From Phallusia mammillata (taxonomy: Eukaryota): a stretch of DNA of 64,000 nt. Of this stretch, positions 8,862 to 47,748 are shown in pieces (position 1 is the first letter of the stretch; each line of letters opens with the position of its first letter). The DNA lies in the NCBI GenBank assembly GCA_965637545.1, contig OZ281494.1, positions 7,874,001 to 7,938,000 of the forward strand, given 5' to 3'. The notes under the pieces are model-generated. The model was given only the letters and a program-made list of their open reading frames with translations, made no database searches and was not told the DNA's origin. The translations under genes and the position numbers were made by a program.

Positions 8862-11463
8862 ATGATGTCCATTTCCCACTTCAGAGTTCAACATTGGTGG
8901 CTGCTAATTTTCCTCATGTGTATGGTAAAGGTAAGATTTTGCTATCATGAACAAATTTGTAAAACCTGATTTGTAAGGAACTTTTGGAAACTGAAATTAA
9001 TCAACTGCGATAAATTATCTCGGATAATTTTTTTTACTGGAAACAATGGTTCCTGGTAAAAGAACTAGGTTTAAAAGTTAACAAAAAAAATTAATAGCGG
9101 TATTAGAAGCAAAAAGTAAGTCACAGCCTTATTGGGGAAAGGGGATCAATATATTATTTAAAACACCCAAAAGCAACAAAAAAACAGAAATCCAAAATAA
9201 GCGGAACAAGTTCCCCTTAAGAAAGGTAGCTGTTACACAAAGCCCATAAGGACAGTTACACAAAGCCCATTGCCCCTTTTTCTTGTTTCTTCATTACCTC
9301 GCGATATACTGAACTTCACCTGAGCATGGAAATTTTGACTCGTTCGATTGATTTTCTTTAGTCGTCTTGCAATGCTGTCGAAGATGAACAGACGGTTGTG
9401 CCAACTAAGCCTCCTGGCTTCTCAACTGGCAGTGAAAAGAAACAAGACGCGCCTGATATTTCGACAACACAACAACCAACTCAATCACCCATCCATTGTG
9501 GTCAGCTTTTTTGGACTAATAATAAATCTGCTGTTATCGTTATAGTGGTGACTCTGAATATATGTTGTTCAGTATCACAGAAAAGGCAAGATGACAAAAT
9601 AAAACTGGAGCTCATACCAATTGGTTTCCTAGTTGCAATCATTATCTGTGCACTAGCGTTTATCATTGACACAAAATCTCAAAAGATTGAACCGGTAAGG
9701 AATTATTTTTATGTTCTCAAAGCCAGAATCGTAACCTCATGTCTAAAACGATTTTTTTCAAAGACATTTTGTTGTGATAATTCAATCAGTGTCGATCTGT
9801 AAATGAACTTCCTTTGATGTATAGGCCAACATCACACCGAACATTCCAGTACTGGACAATTCAACACTGAGCACATCGTTTCAGGGGTAAGTAAATGATA
9901 TCGCGAAGAAAAACCTTGCTTCAAACTAGTCAAACCACAATCAATGGCATTGCCAACCACAAATTGTAAAAGTTGGATTATCACTACTTGCTGAAGATAG
10001 TTCCATTTTATACAGTCAAAAACTGTTGGTTTTGCACAATGTTTCTTATGTTAATGGAGCCTAAAAAGTTTCTTATATTAAACAAGCCGCATTTCATAAT
10101 ATCCAAAAAGGATGAGTATCCAACCGAGTGAGATAATTTGCTGAACAATGATTCAAAATTGCTGACAAAAAAGTGAATTTCTTTACTAGACTTAAGTGTA
10201 GAGACCCTTTAATGCGTTTGGAAAGCTTCCCGCAGAACGCTCACCAGCACCCAGGGTGAAAGCCCATGGGTCTTGCAGGAGTTTTTCTAAGCGCTCAATA
10301 ATATATCGAATAGCAACATAACTTCTGATTTTATATTGCTTTGTTATACAGACCAAAACTTCAACCAGAAAGCGATGTTGACTATATATCAGCGGCACAG
10401 GACAATTTCACATCGGAGAATCCCATCAACGAAGAAGCAAGGACCAAACAAAGCCCAGTGGCAACAGTAACAGAAGGGCTGGGTTTCGACAAAGTTGAAG
10501 CCATTGGTGATGCAGAGTTTCCGGCAACAATTCGAGAACCAGGCCCACCAGAAAAAGTTATAGTTAAACAAAGTCGTGCAGAGGCAACAAACAATGGCCA
10601 GGCACCAGAGAGTGACACAGAGAGAAATCGAAAACGTAAGATTTTGATATTTTTTTTAGTGGATGTAAAATACATAGCTGTGGGTATTAAGCATAAAGTG
10701 AACTTCGTTCGGTTTGGCAAAATAAATTCGACCGGTTTTGACCACCGAGCCTTGCAACAGACTTTAAAATACCTTTCAATCCAAAAACAACAGAATGGGA
10801 GTAGTAATGTGTGGATGTATTTGAATCATGATGTTTTTTGCATGGTTTGCAATACAAAGTAGGATCTATTGTACAGTGTGCTAGGGTTGTTTTTTTCCAG
10901 GCAACTAATGTTAAAAACTTTGTTTAACAGTTGACAAAGCGGAAGGTATTTTGCTTCATCTAATGAGCATATCTGTGACGCCCATTAATGTAATGCAGCT
11001 GGCAGCTCACTTCCAAGTTTCGCTGATAAATCGCCAAAAATTGGAAAGAATCTTCGAAAAAGGTATTCTAACAGTTGTCAAACAAAACAAATGCCTATCG
11101 CGTAGTGAACAAACTGCCAATGCACCATGTACATTTCAACAAACCGTAAGCTTGAATATCCGATACGTTAAGCATAAGAAAAACATCGCCGTAACTATCT
11201 TTTATACCTTTACAATTTACATAGTGGTGCGTATATCAAAGCCTTAAGAATGTATGCAAATGCTTTATAAAGCAAGTAAAATACATAAAGGTTACATTTT
11301 ACGTACAGATCCAAATAGTGACATTCTAGTGTACCTTACGAAAGTCCTGAGGGCAATCCGTTCATCGCATGAGGACTTCAATGTTGAAATGCTGATTGAA
11401 TATTGGAAATCCAACAATATGCGTCCACTTGCGTCGCATTTGGAAGAACAAATGGGATGTTAA
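8862..11463 (+). CDS. g2: CRD-less paralog (signal, short mucin-like ectodomain, TM, death-domain-like; ~320 aa, 7 exons)
   Basis: Exons 8862-8930, 9362-9500, 9573-9694, 9825-9886, 10352-10635, 10931-11062 (132 nt), 11309-11463; 963 nt in frame. Signal MMSISHFRVQHWWLLIFLMCMVK; TM LIPIGFLVAIIICALAFII; DD-like VMQLAAHFQVS..FNVEMLIEYWKSNNMRPLASHLEEQMGC. No CRD exon seen in intron 8931-9361. Confidence 0.85.
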
Positions 11464-19978: not shown

Positions 19979-22900
19979 ACGTCGGGGGTCGGGTCAACTC
20001 CTCCGGGTGTTGACTTTGGCAAGGCTTGTGCTTTTTTAAATGTAAGCAAAACACTAGGGTTTAAACCGGTTTCTTTCAAACTCAGCGAATCCGGCCGAAT
20101 TTTGGTAGCACTTCGAATTTCAACTTTAATACACCACATTTCGGCATTTTAAAATTTTTCGATTAAAAACTTCGGTTCGAAAATCGCTGAGTTTTTGCTG
20201 AATCTGTTTAAACGGAGGGTTCAATAGGTTTCAGGCGTGTAATTTACGTTTCAAAACCGTTTTACGTTAAACTCATTATTTGGTAGTTGGTGTAACTAAA
20301 TTTCTTGTCTGAAATCCATTGAACCTGTTCACAAGTTGAGTTGAAGCACAAATACGGAAAGTAGAACTAGTCACACTTGATTACCCTTGCGTAAACTTTG
20401 CAAAGCAAACACGAAGAAAAAAGCAAGTGTGTATTTGCAATGTGGAGACTATGTATACTTTAAACTGTTTGTGCTTCAACTGTGCTAATGCAAAATCTAC
20501 ATGTATAACATCCACAATCACAGCCGGGTAAATCGCCTAAAATAGTTCTTTAACACGGCTAAATATGTACGGTTTAGTAGTTTATCTTTTTGGAAAGTTG
20601 TGTTGCCTTTTATGCATGTGGATTTTGGCATTTATACAAGCACAAGCGAAAGCCTGTTTGTTATTGTTGTTGTTTTTTTGCAATGTAAATGTTAAACTGT
20701 TCTTAAAACAATCATGCTAAAAAGAACATGCTAAACACGGAATTTCGCAAAACTAACACGAATTTTAAACTGGAATAAAAATATTTTTAATTTTAAACTG
20801 AAATGCTTAGCGCTCCAACGCAAAATCGTAATGTAATGCCCGAAATGGCGATCTTTATTTTGTTCTTGTTCTAGTTTTTTTTTATCAGGGTGCACTGACA
20901 CCTCCCAGAGCATGGGGTCAGAGAATAATGACCCATTGAAAGGGCCCTTTGTGGCCAGTGTGCCTGGCGGCAAACCTATATACTTACAATGAATTATCAT
21001 GAAACTACTTACTTACTTAGCCCTCAGTGCTACTGCTTACATAAGTTGAAACCAAGAGGCTTGTTGCCCTTGGTTGTGGCGGCGGAGGTGAAAAGCCGCG
21101 ATACTTTTTCACAAGATGTTTTACTTTGCTGTTATACGACATAAAAGAGTCACCTAGTGTAGACGCCGTATAAGATATCAGCAAAAAGATGGAATTATAC
21201 AATAAGAAGTGATAACATCTTGATTGCTACGCGAATATGCGCATTCTCCCGTTTTGTAAATATGTACATTTGCATTGTGTGTTATGCCTATATATCAGTA
21301 ATCAACGTAGCTTCGACTTGCCTTAATACTATAAGCATGGCTATTGTGCAAAATTAAATGCGTTTTCTCATGTTTGCGTAACGCAGGTTGTGATCGACTG
21401 TATGGTGTAAAAAGCGCTTTACCAGTTATTGTTGTGACTTGTGATTAAACTTAATCAATAGGTTAGAACGTAGACTTATGCATGCCCCTCTAAAAAAAAT
21501 TGACCACGTTGTATTTTTGGATGGTTGTGTTGCTTCATTTAATTTTTTATGTGGTGCCTAAACGTTTCAAATCAGTAAGTTGCATTTAATTTCATTGTTG
21601 CTTTCACAATCAGCTGTTTGCGCGTGTACGTATTTGTGAAATAAATTGATACGTGGTCATAAGTGGTATTTTTAGTTTCTTCCAATGAAAAGGTGTTTAA
21701 ACCCAAAAGCATTTCAAAACAAAGTCATAGTTCCTCTCTAGTATTGCTATAGCCAGGCATTGCGCAACTTTCGAACAGTCTGGTGAAAGCCACCTCCGAA
21801 AGCATCATACACAGGTCTGCCGTCAGGCTTGAACTAGACTGTACATAACCTAAATAGAAACAACACATTGAAGGAAATACACAATGGGAGTCATTCGAAT
21901 TTTAACAACCAGTTTTTAAGCATAGCGTGACCACAATTATGAGATAATCAGAATGCAGTCAAATCAAAAGAAACAACAACAGTTCCCAGCATTTGCCATA
22001 AACCACAACTTGTTGAAAAAACAAGTGTGTGCTTTTATAAAAGATAAAAGTATTTCAAGGTAAACCTATGTATGTATATGTACATGGCCATGTAGCCAGA
22101 TAGGTTTCAGTAATCAGAAAACGATAAGTAATAGTTATAGATGCACGAAAAGAGGAACTACTGCTACATAACAAAGGGGCTCAGGGAATGACTAAACATT
22201 TTTCTGTTACGGTCTGTTTGCGTTGCAACATTATATGGAGTTAAAGAGACTGTAACCTTTTAAACAAAAAGCTTTGAATAACCAAATTTATTTAATCATT
22301 GTTGCAATAACATATTACCTTATAGTCTATTGTTGTTCGGGAACGAAATCAACTCATGTGTCGATTTTGTACCTATTACAAACAAGCTTATGTTTGTTCA
22401 TGTCGCTTTTACGGGACTTGTAAGTCTTTGCCGTCGGCAAGTCCTGGCAATGCCCACAGAAGAATTACAAGGGTGAAACCTTCTCTGCCACAGTGAAACA
22501 GTTTATTGAATTTGATACATACATTTTGTAGGGGGCACAGGTCTTACGCGGGTTACTTATAGGGGTCAGGAGACCCGAAAGTTACTTTTAGGCACTGTGC
22601 ATGAAAGGTTAAGAACCACCGTTGTAAATTGACCGATAAATACTGTCACGCGATATCAGTACTTTGATTTTTTTGAATACAAAACAAACAAACTGTATTG
22701 ATGTCCAAACAGTTTTAAGTGGATTGTAAGATTTCATAGTTTTTTTAAGAATTTAGGTGAGCTACAACAGACACCATTGACAAACATTTGTAAATGCCGT
22801 TAGGTAGCGTAAAGAGCACAGGTTTTTAGTTAGCAGTGAAATAGAGATATAGGGTTAAGAAGTAAGGTTTAAGAAACTTTAAGGTTATAAACTAAGTTGT

Positions 22901-32545: not shown

Positions 32546-35500
32546 GTACCTTGAGTGCTACGCTTACATGAGTTAAACCAAGTGGAACTACTACCCTTGG
32601 TTGTGGCGGCCGAAGTTAAAAGCCGCAATACCTAAAAAATGATTTGCTGTTATACGACTTGAAAAAAGTCAGTAAATTATCAGCAGTAAGATACGAAAAG
32701 TATGAAAAGAAGTGATAACATCTTGATTGCTTCGCGAATACGCGCATAATTATGTTTTGTAAACATGTATATATGTCTTGTTTTTGTCTATGTCAGTAAC
32801 CAAAGTTGCTCTGATTTGCCTTATCAACAACATGGCAGTTGTCGCAACATGAATGCATTTCTCCCGTAGACGTAGTAAAAAGCGCTTTACCAGTTAATTG
32901 TGGTAATGTGACTCAATCGTTAGATTTACTATACTTTGCCGACCCAACAGAAAAATTGATCGCGTATATGTTATTTGGTTGATTGTTACTGCATTCGAAT
33001 TATCATGTGTAGCCAAACTGTTTCAAAACAATTTGTGTAGCCCCATTGAAAGTGTACATATTGAGAAATAAACTGATACGTGATCATATATGACATTTTC
33101 TAGTTTCTATCAGCAGGCAGCCAGCGACTTGTAAGAGTCCGCTTAACAACAAAGGCTTGGTTCCTTTCATTGTTGAGATGATGCAACTTTCGTCGCGTGT
33201 GGCGAAAGGCGCCTACGGAAAATCACGAACAAAGCCAGACATCGCTGGCCGCGATTGACTTAAAAAAAGAAAAGAATGTGTGACGTACCCCGTCAGTTGA
33301 CCTTGGGTTCGTTTGGAAAACACCTTGAAGGTCGCTTTCCTTCGTATGTTAAAGTCAGGCAACCTTTACTCGCATGTGTGTTTGAACAAAGGGATAAAGA
33401 ACATATTTGTGAGGTTATCAATACAATGCGTGTTGTTACTATGAAACACATCAAATTGTAACAATTCCAAGATTCAACAAACTCACTTAGCACTTGGCGT
33501 GAACAACAACCCTAAACAATAGCGGGAAATAAATAGGTTTGAAAACATGTAACGTTTAACATCCATAGCGGTTTATATGTGAGCTCTGACTATTTAACAA
33601 CCAAGCTAAAATACGTTAGGATGCACAGGAAGTACAAGCTCCCTTCACATAAACGTCAGCACCAGCATGTAGGCTTGGTAATATGTTATGTTTCAGCTAT
33701 CAGTAAACGATAAGAAACTTCGAAAGTAAAAGAGGAACTACAAGACCTCGTAAGTGGCTTAAACCAACGGGGATGACTCGGCAATTTTCGCTTGAAATTT
33801 GTTTATGTTGCAACCAGTGGCGGTTTGTGGATAAGTATTGTGTAACGGCAGAAACCTATATTTTTACTTGATGTTGATGATGAAATTCAGTATGAGCAGA
33901 GTCTTTTTTATTTCTAGTTTGACAATGTACAATCACTAACTTAATACCAGTATCCACCCTACAGTTCAGACAAGCGTTGCAACTTTGACAGAAAATCTAC
34001 TAACATAGGAACTCGCATCAGTCAAGCTTGGTAAATGCCGATTGATGACGCAAAGAACACTTGTGATTTCTACAACATATTTCTGTGCAAATGCTGACGG
34101 TTAGGGCTATTTGAGTTGGGGTGAGACTTCATAATAAAAATAACATTTATAATAATTTACTAGTGCCAGTGCTCATTACGCCATCTATCGGTATTAGCAA
34201 AACTTTTCTGATGTGAGTTGTTTTTCTACCCCAGATATTTCAATTACCAGCTACACAGGCATATGGTTATGCACTAAATTTCAAGTTTTAGTTTTAATTT
34301 TATTTTATAATAAAACCTTTAGCCCGACCCAAAGCCCCAGCTGTCAACATTTCCAAAGAATTTTGCTCTCATAATTCGCCAATCTTTTAGTGCCATATAT
34401 CAGTAAATCAAACTTTGTTTGATAAGAGCTCTCGCTTGAGTAGGTTTTTCGAGTTCTACAGGCAAACAGCTCGACTTTGATAGTTCCAAACAATGTAAAG
34501 CACCGTCGCTCCGAGAGTAAAAAGAAAGAGCAGCGGAGAATAGTAGACAAAGAGCTCATTTGCTCTGGCGGAAAAAAAGAGTGAGGTAGCACTGTCGATT
34601 TCAAATTACTGAAGGTTTGCACAAAGGTAAACAACAAAAGTAGACTTACTTGAATGACAAGTATCATTTACATTATTTAGAATTTAGATTATAGTGAGTA
34701 AAAATTGTGTAATTTGTATTTTTACGATTTTGTAAGTCTCTTCCGGGTTGTTTTTTCTTTTGACATACAATTAAAACAAAACTATTTTTTCTTTGAAATA
34801 ACCGAGCAGACACTCGTTAACGCGAAAAACGTTATTAAAAGTTGGGATGGCACCTTTAAAACAAAATACCTTTAATGTCCGATTCAAGTGTGTTGCATTA
34901 AAACGAAACAATTACAAATAACTGCAGCAACGCTCGAAACTTAAACCAGCGCATGCGTCAATTTCACAACTGTTAAATAAGCAAACGTTTATTTAGGCTT
35001 TATAAATAACTTTTAGGGCACTTTAACTGCGGCCATTACCAACATTCGCCAACTATTATGTCTAGACTACAAACGTTGACAATGCAGGCAGCGAAGCAGA
35101 GCGAACTAGAAAATCTATTTTAGGACAAATTTCACCAGGGGAATACCCGCATTGTGCCTTCGGTGATTTTAAGGCTCGTGTGGCGCAACGTGATTGGTCG
35201 ATCAAACACGCACCATACTCCGTTACAGTTGGTTGCTGACGAAGACTGAAAATCGAAAAGGGGAAGTCGCACAAATGTCAATGTTGTGTCTAACGCAGAC
35301 AGCTTTTGATTTTCAAATTTTAGACTTAATCTTGTAATTGTGTTGCAATAGTTTTATTGTGTTTTGTGGTTCAGCCGAAAGCAGTTAAAACCAAGAAATG
35401 CTACTGTCGGTTCTGCCATTGCCGCTGAGCAGTCTGAGCTTTTCAAATTTTTAACCAGGAAGCTAGAATTGGCAACTGGTGGAAAATTAGGAATGTGTAT

Positions 35501-35983
35501 TATTGGGGAGAAATACCACAACGGATAACTATTATAAACTATTATTAACATAAATTATTGAACAGTAACATTTGCAGCTGCTTTATTGGGAAAGATGCCT
35601 TCGACAGGCATGTTCAGATAGGACGGAAAATACTAATTGCTATCTTACATTTAAAATTCACTACCAGTTTTTTGAACAAGGAAGCAACTGGTGATAGCAA
35701 AAGTACTGTGGAATCTAAGCCTTACTGCAGGGACAGTTTTGCATTGAATATCGAGCTATAACAAAACCTGAATGTAACAAAGAGTTTAAGTTCCTTATTT
35801 GCTCAAACAACTCGACACACTTTGTTCTCCGCCGCGTTGTTAAACCTTCGAGAACTATTAGAGAGAGACCAGACGACAAAAAGCGTGCAGTCTTTGTGTT
35901 TCAACAACACTAACTTGTCTTGTACATTTACATTTGCTCACTAGGTATAGCAATTTTTGCTTAAGCTATTCACTGCGAAAAAG

Positions 35984-38806
35984 ATGCGTTCTGATATTTG
36001 GTCTAAAATCGTTTTGATGCAGTTGCTTGGAAATGCATTTGCACCATTTCTTGTTAAGGTTTGTTACTGTAAAAAGACGACATTTAATCGGCAAAAACCA
36101 TCGCCTGAGGCAACCAAATGTTACTTGTCTCTTAATGATATGTTAAAAACGGCAAATAAAAACAGCAAATAAAACAAAACTAAAGTTAAACTTGCTACTA
36201 CTTAACCTTTGTCAATACGTTGCAACTTTGACATTTTATTACTACCCGCTACTTAATCATTTTCATTTCAAAGTTCCACAGTGTTTAACATAGCGGACCT
36301 TTTACCTTAAAAAAAGGTTTATTTTTTGTTTACTGCTATATTTGCAGGTCGTCGCTGAAGCAAACCATGTCAGGAAACTCTACGGCAACGAGACAGAAGT
36401 TACATCTGGCGCCACTAGCGGAATTCACTTTCCCGAAACATCGACACTGGGGTTTGACTCTACGCGTTATTTTCACGATTGGCGTGACGAAACTGTTTCT
36501 TTAAAGTAAATCGCCACTATATAGCATTTGCACGCCAGTGATACAGTACATCAGCATTGCACGCCGGTGATGCAGTACAGTATTTCTTGCACCCTGGTGG
36601 CTAGTTAGTCGAGCATGCTTTCGATCAGAGAAAACTTTGCGTTGTCGTGATGCATGTTATATATTTCCTTAGAATGGTTTTACACACACAAACAGTGACG
36701 CAATTAGTGTGAAGATTAAACGACTAACCAAAAAGCGTTGTACTAATGCATGTTCTACAAAGACTAAATGTTTTGATATTGTTAAGTGAGATGCAGAATA
36801 AGATGTCTGTATTATGGACTGGCAACAGAAAAACAGTCTACAACTTAAATGTTTGCTCAAAAATATTCGATGCTTGCGTTAAACATTTCGTCTCTGTCAT
36901 GCACAATCGAGACTCGAAAAACAATAAACCATGTTATTTGTTTTACAGAAATCATGCCGTCCAGTCCATAACCAACAAAGATACAGACCAAACTGATGTG
37001 ACAAGCGCAGCAACAATCACAAACACAGATAACCTGACTACCAACGGAACATGCCTGTGTCTTAATGATGCCAACTTCAGAGAGACTTTGGAATACTTTT
37101 TTCACAGTAAGTATTTTAAACAAAAGTGTTAACGCTTGAACAATAAGTCCGTGTAACGTAATTTCTTAAAGAGTAAAAAATAACTTTCAATTCTTCGCCA
37201 CAATTGTGTTCAGCTTGGCAACAAGTAAAACTGCAAACTTGTCATTGAAATTGCTTTAATACATCATATTGTGGCAACCAACCGTGGTCAAAACCACATA
37301 CTACCAGCGTATAATACCGCGTGTATTTTATTTCCGAAACCGATCGCAAAAAGAAGACTACAAAAAAAGCAAAATATTTTCAGGTTTTGTGCGACCCAAT
37401 TGGGGAAAGATCGCAATCGTGCTTCTCATGGTGGCTATGCTTGTCAGCGGTGTATTTCTCGCCATTTACAAGTTCTGCAAGAAACGCGAATTGAAACGGG
37501 TAGAAATTTTACTTAAAACTTCAACATCAAAATACTAGCACTCTCGCACTTTCTTTTTACATGCAGAATCGAACATTGACAGACTCGAACGGACAATCTG
37601 GGACGCAAAACAAATTTCCCACCCAGAGTTTACACGGGACAGTCCAAGAGGCTCCAACAAAAACGTCAGTTTTTACCGTAATTTACTTGTAAAGCAACAT
37701 TTGACAAAGTCTTCGATGTACACACTTACATGCAAAAAAATAATAATTAAAGCCACATTTCAATTACGGTTTATGTGTTATCAGGCCTATCGAATCATTC
37801 GTCGGGACAAGTTTGCCTGGTGTGAGCAGTCGAGTTTGTAACTCTTCTCAAATACTGGTTGGAACAGAAGTTGATTTCTCAGACACAAGCAAGCTGCTAG
37901 CAGATCCCTTTATGGATCAGGCACCACCTGCTCATCCACAAGATTGGACCAACCAAGAACGTTCAGAGGACGAGAACCGATGTTTTGCTGCGGCCACGTA
38001 CCCACAAACACACGAACCAGTTATGTCTATGCAAAGCTTGATAGGTGCAAGTAGGTTACTTTTATATGAATTTTAGAAGCCTCCGGTTCATTCTAAATGA
38101 CACTTTTTGCTCATCGCATTGCCAACAAAGTTGTTGCACTGCAAAAAAAGACCACTACATTGTGCATTAAGTAAAAAAAAAATAATGTTTGTGTTTTTAA
38201 ATCATAAAGCTAAACGTTTACAAATTTTACGAAGACCCCATTGGTAGTATTTGCAAATTTATTTACAATTTACTTCATCATGATTACTTTCATGTAGTGA
38301 AGGTTTTGGAGACTTGCCTGTGGGACCTTGAAAACTCAACAGTTGTTGTTACTCCTGAAATGACCAAGAAATTTGGACAAGCTTTCGACCTTTCGGGAAA
38401 TCAGATTGCGACTTGTGAAGCCAATGCAAGTAAGTAAAGTCTAAGGGAGAAATATCACATTGAAAAAAGGGTTTGATGTTGTCAACGTAATAGTACTCTT
38501 GGTAGGTCGTACTATGTCGGAAATTTATTTTTAATAGAATAACACATGATTAGTTTTGATATAGAATGAAATATACCTCTAACAAATATCTTGGACTTGA
38601 CAATTACCCAAAACTGCATGTATTCGTTTCTAGAGACCAACACCGAATTCTTGGTCAACGTCTTTAAATTCATTCACAACAAGCGTGGACGAGATTTTAC
38701 TCCAGAAATGATGGTAGATTACTTCAAATCAAACGAGCTACGTTTGCTCAGCCAAGTTTTGGAGGCAGCTCTCAACGATAAAGGATATGTACTGTACAAC
38801 CAGTAG
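35984..38806 (+). CDS. g5: CRD-less paralog (Ser/Thr-rich ectodomain, TM, death-domain-like; ~390 aa, 8 exons)
   Basis: Exons 35984-36058, 36348-36505, 36949-37106, 37384-37499, 37567-37664, 37785-38050 (alternative donor 38044), 38298-38429 (132 nt), 38634-38806; in frame. TM IAIVLLMVAMLVSGVFLAIY; DD-like ..EFLVNVFKFIHNKRGRDFTPEMMVDYFKSNELRLLSQVLEAAL. The signal exon and exon-2 donor are the least certain parts. Confidence 0.78.
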
Positions 38807-39721
38807 CTTGCCGCTTAGCTTGTTTACCACCGGCTCCAGGTGTATCTAAGTACATCAGTTCAACAAACAAATTGGGACAAAACGTTTCATGTCGGATATG
38901 ACATTTGAAAGAAGTGTTTAAGTTTAAACGGCCAAAGCTAAACGCAAAGTAGCTAATGTTGAAAAACCTATTCACAAGCAGTAAAAACTTTAGTTTCCAA
39001 GCCTCGAGAAGTACAAAGCCAAGCACAAAGTGTTTGTACTATCGCACATTTTTTGTCAAACATTTGCACCACATTAAAGAAGCAGTCGCAAAATAATTCA
39101 ATCCAGCTAAAAGCAGCAATCCAGAGTTCAATCCAGCTAAAAGCAAATTCCAAACTTTTAGAAAATTATGCAGCATTGCGCTGATACACCATAATTCCAA
39201 AAGTATAACATCTTGCATCCAACTCTTATCCTGTTTTTATGCAAGCCTACGATTCACATAGTGGATGAAGAATAACAAGTCAAAACCAGTTTGTCAACAT
39301 TCGATTTTAGTGGTTATTTGTGATTTCACAAGTGGTAAACTTTAATATAATGTACTGATGCTGTTTGCTTTTTGTAGTGCTTATTTGTACTTGTAAATAT
39401 TGTTTCATACTCTTTGTTTTTATCGCTTTTCTTTTTGTAACATCCTTTTTTGGAAATGCGTTGTAAAATAAACTTTTATTGTCATTATCAGCTTTGTACG
39501 GTGATTTTTGTGCTTGCAGTGAAACAAAACGTTTTTCCAAACTTGTTTCGAGTGATAGAGTGACAATAGTCGGCGCAAAACATACTGTATCTGCAAGCTT
39601 GTAACAGAAAGGGAAAGTGATAATAAAAAAGCAAATGCTTTCGATTGAAAACCGGTAATTTGCGAAAGTGGTATAAACGAGTCAGGTGTTGTGGCTGTAA
39701 AGGCATCGTCATTCTCTAAAT

Positions 39722-40729: not shown

Positions 40730-43700
40730 ATGCTGATCGTCAAAATGTTAGTTACTTTGTCATTGATTATGGTAAGTTTAAACTGCAGTCTTTTATCACT
40801 CAAAATACTATTTTACACTTACACTTTCTTCTTTTAGGCAGCCAACCTCAAAGACATTCCAGATCCTTGTAAGCATTTGGAGGCACGCGAAGGTGGGCGC
40901 AAACTTGTTGAAATGTACAAAAATAATGTTCCGAGGCAATGTTGTGGATGCCCTCCTGGATTTTATCTGCACACTGTCTGCGAGTAAGAAAGTGTTAAAA
41001 AAACGGACCGATTTTGGCAACATCATGAACTGTAGTCCATATCATAAAACATTCAGTTTGTATAGAAATAAAACAATAAAAACCTGTAGTTTTGACCTTT
41101 AATGTTTTTAGGTGTCTATGCATTATAAAAATAATGGCATTATTCTGTAATTTACAACTTGGTACATTTGTTTCAGAAAAGGAAATTTTAATTCAACAGT
41201 GTGTAAAAAATGCAAGAATGGAACTTTTATTGATGAAAAGGCCCATGACAAGAGGAACTGTATCACTCTTCCTAACAAATCAATCACAACACAAGCTCCA
41301 TCCTTTGAAGAAATGTATATTTCTTTCTTGTAACAAGTAGTTTATTTTCTGATAAACCAGGACAAAAGCATTTTGTGATTTAATTCCATGAAAACTACAC
41401 TTTAAAAGTCCTTATTTGTGCAGAAATTCCAATATCAACTCACCAGTGTGTGTGGAAAGTGAAAACGGAAATTTTATTTTTAAAAAACCTCATGACAAAA
41501 GAAGGTGTACCCAGACAACGCAAGCTTCATTCTCAGCAGAAATGTACAACAACTTCTCTATTTTTCAATTTTGAACAGTAGTTAATGCTCAATCAACAAA
41601 ATAGTCATACACTTTTTGACATTGATTGTTTACACACCACAGCAAAACCTAACACTTATTTTTAATGCAGGATTTCGCAATATGTTACACCAAAAATGAC
41701 CACAGAAAAAATTATTGAGTCTGTCACTGAGTGGAGCTTGGGTATAAGTAAGTTATACCTTATACCAAAAACAGCACACCAAAAATAATGCTATTTTATT
41801 TCTTTAGATGATGGGATTGTGCTATTGCTTGGTGTGGCCTTCGGAAAGTTTTTACTACTAATAATTATACAATTTTCAAAGAAAAAAGAAACCACATGGA
41901 AAGATGTTTTTCATAACATTATTGTTTGCTGCAACAAATGTGACAAGGTTTGGTTAACACATTTAAATGTTAAGAGTTAAGATTTTGTTAATCAATGTGC
42001 ATGAATTTTCAATATTTGCAGTGCTTTGACAGGTTGAAAACTGTTTTAAGTACCAAATGTCACATAGGGAAGAGTCTGTGAAACATTACAGAATTGGCTG
42101 ACAGCTTTATGTCACTTATGGTGTTGATCTAAGTAAGTTATAAAACAAGCTATTAAACACACAGGTTCAAAACAATAAGGAAGACGGTGAACCTGAAGAA
42201 AACATCCGATTAGCTGAAAATCCACCAGACTACAGGTATGTAAAGATGAAGTTTTCAGGCAACCTATCACACAAGTGGTTTAATTGCTTCACATGAATAT
42301 TAACTTACAGACCAGAACCTTTTTTTGAATCACAATCATCATCACTACCAAATGATACTCATAACACAAGCAGCTTATCAACTCTAAAAAATACTAGTGT
42401 TGCTGAAGAAAGACAAGATGCTATTCAACTTGGAGCCCAACCCTCAGATGAAACCATACCAAAACAACCCATAGCTGTTCGTGCAAAAACAAAATCTGAA
42501 ACTACTATCAAAGATGCTGTGCCTGAAAAAGAATGTGAAATTTTGATATGTAAGTGAACGAAAGATATACATAGATATATCTGCAATAGTCTTGGACAAT
42601 CAAATTAACTGTGTTGGACTCTTGCCTGTGTGTATGCTTGGTATAGGCACTGTCTTATAAACTTATCAGTAAGTATTTCCCCATGTGCTCAGACACCGAT
42701 TGGACAGCAATTTTGTTCCTTTTTTAGACAGGCTTTGACTTTTGATTGGCAAAATGTAGTCATATTTCCCCCAATTTAAAAAAGAAGTGTTTTACAAGAA
42801 GAAATCGTACAGCTTTCTGTTCAACTTAAATTTTAAATTTGCAGTTATGTTTTTTGCAAAACGCGCTGCAGTAAATAGGCCTGCTGCACTTTTTATATCA
42901 AAAAAACATGCTATCTTTGTATTTTAGTAAAAAGGGTGCTGGCAAGTATTGCCCACAAACAACCACACATTCTACTTGAACAAAAGGATGCATTTAATCT
43001 TGCAAGAAAATTTGATATTGGAGAAATTACTTGTTCACATCTTTCCACAAAACATGCAGGTACCTTTCCATCAATATTTTACAAAATGTCCAATCTAATT
43101 TAAACACTTCCTTAATACTAACCAGTTTTTGTTTTTTTAAAAAAAAGCATTTTTAATGCTGCATTTATTCGATTGTAAGCCATATCTTATAAAGTTGTTT
43201 TACCCTACAGTTTGTGCGGCTTCGATGGAGGCTTATAATTGAGGGCAGCTTATATTTTATTATCATACCCCTATTATTTCCATGTCCCTGCATTTTAAAT
43301 TAGTTCGCTTTCATTTTTTGCATGTACGCATTACACAATTGTTTGCCTGACTAACAAATGTTGACAAAAAATAACACTAATTAGCAACAAAAGGAAGTGT
43401 TACAAAACAATAGAGAGTAACAAGTGACTTACAGTCGAGGGCGATTGACATTATATTGTTGCAACCTTAAAGTTCGACTTACAATTAAATGCAGCTTACA
43501 ATCGAGTAAATACTTTTTTTCCGTTTTTAATACGAGTTAGCAAAGCTTATTTTCGAATCCAACACAGTAAGGTTGGTGTGGTGTATTACATTCACCACCC
43601 AAATTGAAGTTATAGCATAATCCAATTTAGCAAAATACCAAAAGTTAAAAACACTCACATATTAGGTGAAAGTTTACTGATGTGTGAACTTTTGTGTGTT

Positions 43701-46328: not shown

Positions 46329-47748
46329 AAAGTTTAATTATTCCCACCTTGACCTACAAAGTCAATGTTGTACCTACCGAATTACCAGAAGCTTTCGTCA
46401 AAAACCTTAAAATAATTTTCTTTAAGTTCATTTGGAACTCAAAATGGGAAAAAGTTAAACGAGCAAAGCTCTGTTGTAATATTGAGGATGGGGGAATCAA
46501 TATGTTTGACCTGGACGCATATCTGGTGTCATTAGATATCAAATGGGTCAATCGATTATTTAACAATTCGTATGCATCTCCATGGAAAGATCTCGAAACC
46601 TCGGTCGGGAGCCCCAGCGAATTCAACTCGTGGTTAAACAGCAGTGTGTCTCCCAACTCAAAACTCTTCCTTCAATCAATCCCCTTACGAACATTAAGAA
46701 AGGCAGTCTCGGCCTGCAAAACATTCGCAAAACTTACAAATCTCCCCGCTAATGTTTATAGACCCCTTTGGTTAAATAAAGAAGTCCGATCACGCCTAAA
46801 ACCCTTTTACATGCGACATCTAATTCGCGCTGGTATTTTCAGTCACCTTGATCTACTTAACAATGATGGTGATTACTATACATACGACGAACTTGCCCTC
46901 AAATTTAACTTTCAGCCAACAAATCAAGATTTCACCTATTTTATCAAATTAGTCGCCGCAATCCCAGACAATTGGGATCTAAACGACCGACAAACTAACA
47001 GAGTACCCCCTGAAACTAAACCATCTTGGTTGCATACCATAGCCCTGCGCGGCACAGTTAAAGAAACTTACAACTTCGTAAAAGATCACACATCAGAACC
47101 GCCAACACAAGAACAGAAAAAGTGGGAAACCGACATAGGGGTTAGTACAGAAAAGCCCAACTGGGGGGAGGTGTACAGGAACACGTATAACTGTACCTTA
47201 GAAACAAACTTAAGAGCATTTCAAATCAAATTAAACTTAAGAGCGGTAATAACAAACAATAAACTATACAATTTTGGCATAGTAACTTCAGAAAAGTGCG
47301 TTTTCTGCCAAAGTTTCCCTGAAACCATTTCTCATTTGTTTTACACTTGCAAAGTCGTCGCCCAATATTGGGAAAATGTTACTTCTTGGATCTCCCGCAA
47401 ACTATTATTGAATATTAAACCGAATGTAGCGTTATGTTTATTTGGAACTCATTTGTACAGTTCTGTTACACCATTGTTAAATTGCATTTTTCTATGTGCC
47501 CGGTTTGTAATATACCAATGTAAATGTATGTGCACAAAACAAACCTACTGTGAACAGATTTATTAACGCATTAAAACTAACGAAACAGTCCGAACTAATT
47601 ATTGCTACTAAAAGAAAAAAACGTGCAGAGTGCTTAGTCAAGTGGTCTGGCCTCTAATTGCCGTTAAATACTTAGCGTTTGTCTGTTTGTTCTGTTGTAC
47701 TTTAATGTATCTGTCTTTCTTCGTGTCTTAGTTATCGCAATAAAAAAA
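46329..47748 (+). mobile_element. 5'-truncated non-LTR retrotransposon (L1/Tx1-like), 3' part of ORF2
   Basis: Translation SLIIPTLTY..FIWNSK..GGI..W..L; zinc knuckle CVFC..ETISHLFYTC; one frameshift near 47540, then KPTVNRF..ELIIATKRKK..KWSGL* ending 47657. AATAAA at 47739 plus A-tail; 15-bp TSD AGTCGAGATTTAGGG at 46314-46328 and 47749-47763. Confidence 0.92.

What the first reader, a model, noticed from the sequence alone, without database searches (positions are those of the whole stretch)
35984..38806. g5: second, apparently independent CRD loss, with the CRD-a exon remodelled into a cysteine-free segment
Seen: g5 exon 2 (36348-36505) keeps the position, phase (0-2) and length (158 nt versus 146-167) of the CRD-a exon. 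It starts VVAEANHVRK (compare VTAADHNSAVK in g1 and VFAVNPDVKK in g4) but has no Cys. The 2-2 CRD-b exon is absent, and the next exon is a Thr-rich stalk with a lone CLC. The g5 DD (EFLVNVFKFIHNKRG..YFKSN) resembles g8/g1, not g2. Inferred: CRD loss happened twice by different routes, so each DD subgroup has its own CRD-less member. This suggests a paired sensor/helper design.
Basis: partly seen in the sequence, partly recalled or inferred. Interest (0 to 1): 0.72.

Follow-up and report, generated by a model that had tools for sequence, protein, structure and literature searches.

The report
Sea-squirt death receptor without ligand-binding domain
One gene in a sea-squirt cluster of eight TNF-receptor-like death receptors has an intact reading frame and a well-kept death domain but no cysteine-rich ligand-binding module; this loss is separate from the one in a neighbouring gene, but whether the gene is expressed could not be tested.

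Summary
The structural observation holds. g5 (35984-38806, + strand) is an eight-exon GT-AG model with an unbroken frame of 389 or 391 codons. Its exon phases match the transcript-supported paralogs (Phallusia mammillata g1, g3, g6) exactly, minus the 2-2 CRD-b exon. Exon 2 (36348-36505, 158 nt, phase 0-2) sits where CRD-a sits and has no Cys. CRD-a and CRD-b profiles find every true CRD exon in the window but nothing in or upstream of g5.

Independent loss is supported. In the death-domain tree g2 nests with g3/g4 (97/97), and a g2+g5 clade is rejected (AU p 0.004).

Three points are weaker:
- Exon 2 shows no significant similarity to any CRD-a exon, so "remodelled CRD-a" rests on position and phase alone.
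- g5's place among g1, g8 and g6/g7 is unresolved.
- Nothing supports the "one CRD-less helper per clade" or sensor/helper idea.

g5's death domain is the most consensus-like in the array, while its ectodomain has diverged freely. This favours a working, ligand-independent, NRADD/p45-like modulator over a pseudogene.

No public protein matches g5. The scan had already noted the sister case, g2, on this same window.

The parts
35984..36058 (+). g5 exon 1: start codon and putative signal peptide (25 codons, phase 0-0)
   Evidence: ATG at 35984 and donor AAG|gtttgt with PWM score 7.8, near the training mean of 8.0. The hydrophobic core is weak: 1.62 against 2.5-3.3 in g1, g3 and g6. Its codon-usage score cannot be told from non-coding sequence. 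This is the least certain exon.
36348..36505 (+). g5 exon 2: Cys-free segment at the position of the CRD-a exon (158 nt, phase 0-2)
   Evidence: It is the best of 24 frame-keeping candidate exons between exons 1 and 3, and skipping it gives a premature stop. Its codon-usage score is in the top 0.4% of stop-free non-coding windows. It shows no similarity to CRD-a exons.
36949..37106 (+). g5 exon 3: Thr/Asn-rich stalk with two N-glycosylation sequons and a membrane-proximal CLC (158 nt, phase 2-1)
   Evidence: The phase matches the stalk exon of g1, g3 and g6 (2-1, 71-77 nt), but this exon is twice as long. It is not a duplicate of exon 2 (z -0.7).
37384..37499 (+). g5 exon 4: transmembrane segment followed by basic KFCKKRELKR (116 nt, phase 1-0)
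   Evidence: The 19-residue hydrophobicity is 2.96. The phase is the same as the TM exons of g1, g3 and g6.
37567..37664 (+). g5 exon 5: cytoplasmic linker (98 nt, phase 0-2)
   Evidence: The phase is the same as the first post-TM exon of g6.
37785..38050 (+). g5 exon 6: acidic cytoplasmic linker (phase 2-1), with two in-frame donors at 38044 and 38050
   Evidence: The donor after 38050 scores 7.8 and the one after 38044 scores -0.3. Both keep the frame. No public protein shares words with this exon.
38298..38429 (+). g5 exon 7: N-terminal half of the death domain (132 nt, phase 1-1)
   Evidence: Length and phase are as in g2, g3, g4, g6 and g7, all 132 nt. It aligns with the family.
38634..38806 (+). 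g5 exon 8: C-terminal half of the death domain and stop codon TAG (38804-38806)
   Evidence: The joined death domain scores 80 bits against a family HMM built without it, the highest of ten members.

Best explanation
g5 is a structurally intact paralog in a tandem array of Phallusia mammillata TNF-receptor-like death receptors, and it has lost its cysteine-rich ligand-binding module.

Predicted product, from the sequence:
- a weak signal peptide;
- an ectodomain of about 106 residues, rich in Thr, Ser and Asn, probably glycosylated and unstructured, with one membrane-proximal CxC;
- one transmembrane helix;
- an acidic linker;
- a C-terminal six-helix death domain.

How the loss most likely happened (inferred). 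The TNFR-type CRD is encoded across the CRD-a and CRD-b exons. Removing the symmetric 2-2 CRD-b exon kept the frame but broke the fold. The exon left in the CRD-a slot (0-2) was then held only to stay open and keep its length class, and it drifted into a Cys-free spacer. This loss is separate from the one in g2.

How it most likely works (inferred, by analogy with vertebrate p45/NRADD). g5 cannot bind a TNF-type ligand through a CRD. It would act through its transmembrane segment and death domain, as a ligand-independent partner or modulator of CRD-bearing receptors or of death-domain adaptors.

Shown here: the anatomy, the absence of CRD sequence, the independence from g2, and a conserved death domain. 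Inferred: the order of events, expression and function.
For: - The frame is intact over 8 exons, with canonical splice sites that score like transcript-supported introns.
- The exon-phase pattern equals that of g6 minus the 2-2 exons.
- The family ectodomain profile hits only TNFRSF CRDs in the PDB: OPG 2.5e-4, DcR3, DR6, p75. The match spans the a/b exon junction.
- CRD profiles find nothing in g5.
- The family C-terminal domain folds as six helices at pLDDT 93.7. Its top 25 Foldseek matches are all death domains, as are most of the next ten (TM mostly 0.55-0.8). The sequence profile's top three PDB hits are Fas death domains.
- g5's death domain is the most consensus-like of ten (80 bits leave-one-out; zero-length terminal branch), while exon 2 has lost all similarity. 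Constraint is therefore uneven, as expected for a working gene.
- Exon 2 is coding-like in codon usage and is the best frame-keeping exon.
- The g2+g5 clade is rejected.
- p45/NRADD precedent: heterodimerises with p75 through TM and DD (PMC4122344).
Against: - There is no expression or splicing evidence.
- No g5 protein exists among 1.84 billion representatives, although transcript-derived proteins of g1, g3 and g6 are there. Exon 6 has no word match.
- The signal peptide is weak.
- No ortholog was found that would allow a test of selection.
- Pfam's Death and TNFR_c6 models do not reach threshold on any family member.
- The death-domain fold was tested on g1 with g5 fragments in the alignment, not on g5 itself.
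Confidence: 0.55

Rival explanations
1. g5 is a silent or decaying duplicate. The CRD loss was the first step of pseudogenisation, and the open frame is a leftover with no function.
For: No public protein or transcript-derived entry matches g5. The signal peptide is weak. Some donors are weak: exons 4 and 5 score 4.1 and 3.4.
Against: All 8 exons are open with conserved phases. The death domain is the least diverged from the family consensus, while exon 2 has diverged completely. Uniform neutral decay does not predict this. g8, which has CRDs, is also missing from the public protein set, so absence there says little.
Confidence: 0.25
2. Exon 2 does not descend from the CRD-a exon. Both CRD exons were deleted or lost, and an unrelated stretch of intron was recruited as a frame-keeping exon.
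For: There is no significant similarity to any CRD-a exon at DNA or protein level, in any frame. The two informative phases alone would match by chance about 1 time in 9 (my estimate from the phase tables).
Against: Slot, phase and length class are the same as CRD-a, and intron 1 is of similar size. There is a borderline DNA match to the start of g4's CRD-a exon, 17/36, uncorrected p 0.003. Drift in place needs fewer events.
Confidence: 0.3
3. There was one CRD loss. g2 and g5 share a CRD-less ancestor, and the death-domain tree is misled by gene conversion or recombination in the array.
For: Tandem arrays are prone to conversion. The tree rests on about 100 columns.
Against: The AU test rejects g2+g5 (p 0.0036 and 0.027). 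g2 shares a one-residue deletion and cytoplasmic-linker similarity with g3/g4. g2 is only 33% identical to g3, so there was no recent conversion. The 5' exons of g2 and g5 share no similarity and have different structures.
Confidence: 0.05
4. The 5' part of the model is wrong. The real transcript starts elsewhere or uses other exons, so the 'Cys-free exon' is not part of the protein.
For: Exon 1 has a weak hydrophobic core and no coding signal. There is no transcript evidence.
Against: No better first exon lies within 3 kb upstream. No CRD exon is hidden between g4 and g5. Exon 2 is the top frame-keeping candidate, with normal splice scores and coding-like codon usage.
Confidence: 0.12

Closest known systems
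Vertebrate NRADD / NRH2 / p45 (p75NTR homologue)
   Same: Both are single-pass membrane proteins of the TNFR family with a short ectodomain that lacks the ligand-binding CRDs and a retained cytoplasmic death domain. p45 heterodimerises with the CRD-bearing p75 through TM and DD and modulates its signalling (PMC4122344). This is the working model proposed for g5.
   Different: g5 arose inside an ascidian-specific tandem array and is not an NRADD ortholog. The family death-domain profile hits Fas and TRADD rather than p75. g5's ectodomain is about 106 residues long and Thr-rich. No interaction or expression data exist.
TNFRSF death receptors (Fas, TNFR1, DR3, DR6, p75NTR, EDAR)
   Same: The paralogs g1, g3, g4, g6, g7 and g8 have a TNFR-type CRD (profile hits to OPG, DcR3, DR6 and p75), a TM segment and a C-terminal death-domain fold. 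g5 shares the TM, linker and death-domain exons and their phases.
   Different: g5 has no CRD at all. The whole family is too diverged for Pfam's TNFR_c6 or Death models to reach threshold.
g2 of the same array (earlier scan note s1-358931)
   Same: It is a second CRD-less, death-domain-bearing gene in the same eight-gene cluster.
   Different: It belongs to a different clade, nested with g3/g4. Its 5' structure also differs: after the signal exon I read one continuous open exon at 9362-9696, with no 0-2 and 2-1 exon pair as in g5 (not transcript-checked).
Paired plant NLR sensor/helper genes
   Same: The only shared feature is that some members of a clustered receptor family lack the recognition module.
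   Different: All eight genes are in tandem on one strand, not head-to-head. There is no one-to-one pairing by clade and no evidence of co-expression.

Membership tests
TNF receptor superfamily death receptor | Extracellular TNFR-type cysteine-rich domain | tested here: not met
   For g5, CRD-a and CRD-b profiles give no hit in any frame, and the ectodomain has 2 Cys. For the paralogs the feature is met: profile A4 hits TNFRSF11B at 2.5e-4, then DcR3, DR6 and p75, although Pfam TNFR_c6 stays below cutoff (E 0.41).
TNF receptor superfamily death receptor | Cytoplasmic death domain (six-helix bundle) | tested here: met
   At family level: an AF2 model of the g1 C-terminus, with g5 exon fragments in the alignment, has pLDDT 93.7 and six helices. 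Its top 25 Foldseek matches are all death domains, as are most of the next ten. Profile A3's top three PDB hits are Fas DD at E about 0.01. g5 itself scores 80 bits against a family HMM built without it. The g5 domain was not folded, because its two exons have no single reference. Pfam's Death model gives no hit.
TNF receptor superfamily death receptor | Type I single-pass topology (signal peptide plus one TM) | tested here: inconclusive
   The TM segment is clear (hydrophobicity 2.96, followed by basic residues). The signal peptide core is weak, 1.62 against 2.5-3.3 in paralogs.
TNF receptor superfamily death receptor | Shared descent with the array's CRD-bearing genes (exon and phase scaffold) | tested here: met
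   The phases 0-0, 0-2, 2-1, 1-0, 0-2, 2-1, 1-1, 1-0 equal g6's pattern minus its two 2-2 exons. The DD-N exon is 132 nt, as in five paralogs.
NRADD / NRH2 / p45 | Architecture: CRD-less short ectodomain, TM and death domain | tested here: met
NRADD / NRH2 / p45 | Orthology to the vertebrate NGFR/NRADD duplicate pair | not tested
   No NRADD sequence was compared here. g5 groups with the genes of this ascidian array, and the family profile's best solved relatives are Fas and TRADD, not p75. Independent origin is therefore inferred.
NRADD / NRH2 / p45 | Heterodimerises with a CRD-bearing paralog through TM and DD | not testable with these tools
   This needs co-immunoprecipitation or a similar assay. 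The precedent is PMC4122344.
Paired sensor/helper receptor genes | One CRD-less 'helper' per death-domain clade | tested here: not met
   The clades are (g2,g3,g4), (g6,g7) and (g1,P0005), with g8 alone. g5 has no resolved partner clade (support 55/59; AU p 0.28-0.40 for alternatives).
Paired sensor/helper receptor genes | Physical or regulatory pairing (head-to-head arrangement, co-expression) | tested here: not met
   All eight genes are on the + strand in tandem.

The most novel reading that the evidence does not exclude
Ascidian death-receptor arrays repeatedly produce CRD-less paralogs whose death domains stay under strong constraint. These would serve as dedicated ligand-blind partner subunits that set the signalling threshold of neighbouring CRD-bearing receptors. 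That would be a convergent, recurrent NRADD-like solution, loosely like sensor/helper pairs. g5, with the most consensus-like death domain of the array, would be a general partner for several paralogs.
Probability: 0.07. Interest if true: 0.7.

Novelty: new member of a known kind. Interest (0 to 1): 0.3.

Why it matters
If g5 is expressed, it is a second, independently derived CRD-less death-domain receptor in one small gene cluster of a vertebrate sister group. It would show that the NRADD/p45-type architecture arises repeatedly by loss of a symmetric exon. It would also give a tractable invertebrate chordate system for asking what ligand-blind death-domain receptors do. It illustrates how an exon can persist as a frame-keeping spacer after its fold is destroyed. 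As it stands it is a sound gene-family observation without functional or expression support, mainly of interest to specialists in TNFR evolution.

Tried and rejected
- Pfam on single g5 exons and on paralog exons gave nothing useful. Even the full-length transcript-derived proteins do not reach Pfam's Death or TNFR_c6 cutoffs.
- Half-domain profiles against the PDB gave only noise. Whole-domain profiles were needed.
- The look-up of encoding contigs found no record for P0002.
- A word search with g5 exon 6 found nothing, not even itself, so this genome's own ORFs are not in that collection.
- Exons 2 and 3 (both 158 nt) as tandem duplicates: rejected, z -0.7.
- A frame-shifted relic of the PCxHL motif in exon 2 (a 7-nt match seen by eye): not supported by the DNA alignments or by the six-frame profile search.
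- The CLC of exon 3 as a relic of the CRD-b CxxC: no profile hit, and the order is wrong relative to the stalk.
- Repeats or mobile elements in g5's introns that might explain a deletion: none found.
- The AF2 model of the family ectodomain was too poor to search (pLDDT 60).
- The gene carrying g5-like death-domain exons on metagenome contigs L001-L006 could not be traced upstream. There is no CRD hit within 10 kb. The contig's called genes use TGA as a sense codon, so they could not be given by reference to fetch more flank.

Full report
Scope and limits. The joined protein was never sent to any database or fold tool. Joined sequences were built only inside local scripts, from window.fa, for the ORF check, the death-domain tree and the leave-one-out HMM.

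What is at the coordinates. Reading 35800-39000 gives an eight-exon GT-AG model on the + strand:

| Exon | Coordinates | Length (nt) | Phase |
|---|---|---|---|
| e1 | 35984-36058 | 75 | 0-0 |
| e2 | 36348-36505 | 158 | 0-2 |
| e3 | 36949-37106 | 158 | 2-1 |
| e4 | 37384-37499 | 116 | 1-0 |
| e5 | 37567-37664 | 98 | 0-2 |
| e6 | 37785-38044 or -38050 | 260 or 266 | 2-1 |
| e7 | 38298-38429 | 132 | 1-1 |
| e8 | 38634-38806 | 173 | 1-0, ends in TAG |

- The joined frame is open for 389 or 391 codons.
- Exon 2 translates to 52 residues without Cys.
- The mature ectodomain (e2 plus e3) is about 106 residues: 17% Thr, three N-glycosylation sequons, and only two Cys, the CLC.

Organism and family.
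- A profile of the eight last exons, run against 1.84 billion representative proteins, returned nine hits. Three are Phallusia mammillata proteins, and two are short ORF fragments from metagenome contigs.
- P0001 matches g3 and P0002 matches g6 at about 100% over their exons. P0010 matches g1 apart from a few residue (presumably allelic) differences. P0005 is a g1-like paralog from elsewhere in the genome.
- The window is therefore P. mammillata, and g1, g3 and g6 have protein entries in public databases. The earlier scan notes had already called it a sea squirt.
- Pfam does not recognise the family, even on full-length proteins.
- A profile of the ectodomains hits only TNFRSF cysteine-rich domains in the PDB: OPG 2.5e-4, DcR3, DR6 and p75. 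The match spans the CRD-a/CRD-b exon junction.
- A profile of the C-terminal domain has Fas death domains as its top three hits, at E about 0.01.
- An AlphaFold model of that domain has pLDDT 93.7 and six helices. Its top 25 Foldseek matches are all death domains, as are most of the next ten.
- The genes are therefore TNFR-like death receptors, strongly diverged.

Exon scaffold. Mapping the three proteins back to the window gives the family pattern:
- signal exon 0-0;
- CRD-a 0-2;
- CRD-b 2-2 (one copy in g1 and g3, two in g6);
- stalk 2-1 (71-77 nt);
- TM 1-0;
- linker exons;
- DD-N 1-1 (132-135 nt);
- DD-C 1-0.

g5 has this pattern minus the 2-2 exon. Its two-exon linker (0-2, 2-1) is the same as in g6.

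Is any CRD sequence left?
- HMMs of the CRD-a and CRD-b exons were run without filters on all six-frame pieces of the window. They recover every true CRD-a exon (E 1e-20 to 1e-28) and every CRD-b exon (E 1e-12 to 1e-26, with g8's at 0.002).
- They find nothing in g5's exons or introns, nor in the 4.4 kb between g4 and g5.
- Pairwise tests agree. True CRD-a exons recognise each other at z 5-35. Most pairs still do so, more weakly, with Cys masked. g5 exon 2 reaches at most z 2.2 at protein level and 1.6 at DNA level.
At DNA level it is borderline only: 17/36 with g4, p 0.003 before correction for seven comparisons.
- Exons 2 and 3 are not duplicates of each other.
- The claim that the CRD-a exon was remodelled therefore rests on slot, phase and length, not on sequence.

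Is exon 2 a plausible exon?
- Skipping it gives a stop after 40 codons.
- Of 24 open, frame-keeping AG...GT candidates between exons 1 and 3, it scores best. Its splice scores (7.5 and 6.6) are close to the means of 29 transcript-supported introns (8.8 and 8.0).
- Its codon usage, scored with a table trained on the g1, g3 and g6 coding sequence against their introns, is in the top 0.4% of stop-free non-coding windows. This is similar to untrained true exons of g4 and g8.
- Exon 1 is the weak point. It has a poor hydrophobic core and no coding signal.

Independent loss.
- The tree of the joined death domains used the eight genes, P0005 and the metagenome gene. It gives (g2,(g3,g4)) 97/97, (g6,g7) 93/85 and (g1,P0005) 99/99. 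g5 sits on a zero-length branch, weakly joined to g8, L001x and g1 (55/59).
- Holding g2 and g5 together costs 21.7 log-likelihood units (AU p 0.0036). With the eight window genes only, p is 0.027.
- g2, g3 and g4 also share a one-residue deletion in the DD-C exon and linker similarity.
- The CRD exons of the other six genes are homologous to each other and to vertebrate TNFRSF CRDs. The CRD is therefore ancestral, and two losses are needed.
- g5's own affinity is unresolved. Joining it to g6/g7 (p 0.28) or placing it next to the g2-g4 clade (p 0.40) is not rejected. It is 26% identical to each of g1, g2 and g8.

Functional or decaying?
- g5's death domain scores 80 bits against a family HMM built without it. 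This is the highest of the ten members, which range from 54 to 77.
- The death domain has changed least, while exon 2 has changed beyond recognition. Such uneven constraint points to a gene kept for its cytoplasmic part.
- Against this, there is no transcript evidence, no public protein, a weak signal peptide, and no ortholog for a dN/dS test.

Mechanism.
- The CRD is split across exons a and b. Loss of the symmetric 2-2 exon keeps the frame but breaks the fold.
- The remaining 0-2 exon then only has to stay open and keep its length class, so it is free to drift.
- The product would be a ligand-blind, glycosylated, single-pass protein with a death domain.
- The closest known case is vertebrate p45/NRH2/NRADD, which heterodimerises with p75 through TM and DD and modulates it (PMC4122344).
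- g5 works-like that at the level of architecture only. It is not an ortholog, and no interaction was tested.

Sensor/helper idea. It is not supported. The genes lie in tandem on one strand, g5 has no resolved partner clade, (g6,g7) and g8 have no CRD-less member of their own, and expression is unknown.

Verdict. 'Remodelled CRD-a exon' is plausible but only positional, and the pairing hypothesis is unsupported. This is a new instance of a known architecture, of moderate-to-low interest until expression is shown.

Noticed in passing
window 38044-38051: Exon 6 of g5 has two in-frame donors 6 nt apart: GTGCAA after 38044, scoring -0.3, and GTAGGT after 38050, scoring 7.8. The second is the better site and adds two residues.
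   Followed up: partly
window 41424-41543: g6 carries a second, tandem CRD-b exon that is present in the public protein P0002. It has lost one Cys of the CxxC pair (VCVES instead of VCKKC). This is a partial cysteine loss inside an exon that the public protein entry includes, a milder version of what is proposed for g5 exon 2.
   Followed up: partly
L001:9098-10162 (same locus in L002-L006): Contigs from six metagenome or SRA samples, 99.6-99.9% identical to each other, come from an unidentified eukaryote. They carry DD-N and DD-C exons of this family whose best tblastn matches in the window are to g5. No CRD profile hit lies within 10 kb upstream. The gene caller read TGA as Trp there.
   Followed up: partly
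not in window (protein P0005): P. mammillata has a further g1-like death receptor, 57% identical to g1 and with CRDs, encoded outside this window. The family is therefore larger than the eight genes here.
   Followed up: no
window 46349-47566: A 405-codon ORF between g6 and g7 matches the zinc-binding region of reverse transcriptases (zf-RVT, E 3.5e-8). It is a retroelement remnant inside the array.
   Followed up: partly
window 32554-33108 vs 21026-21680: The g3/g4 duplication unit extends about 1.5 kb beyond the stop codons, at 70-83% DNA identity. This gives the size of the most recent tandem duplication in the array.
   Followed up: no
window 9362-9696: By my reading, the second exon of g2 is one continuous open stretch of 335 nt (phase 0-2) holding a Pro/Thr/Gln-rich segment and two hydrophobic segments. 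Removing the apparent 71-nt GT-AG interval inside it would break the frame.
   Followed up: no
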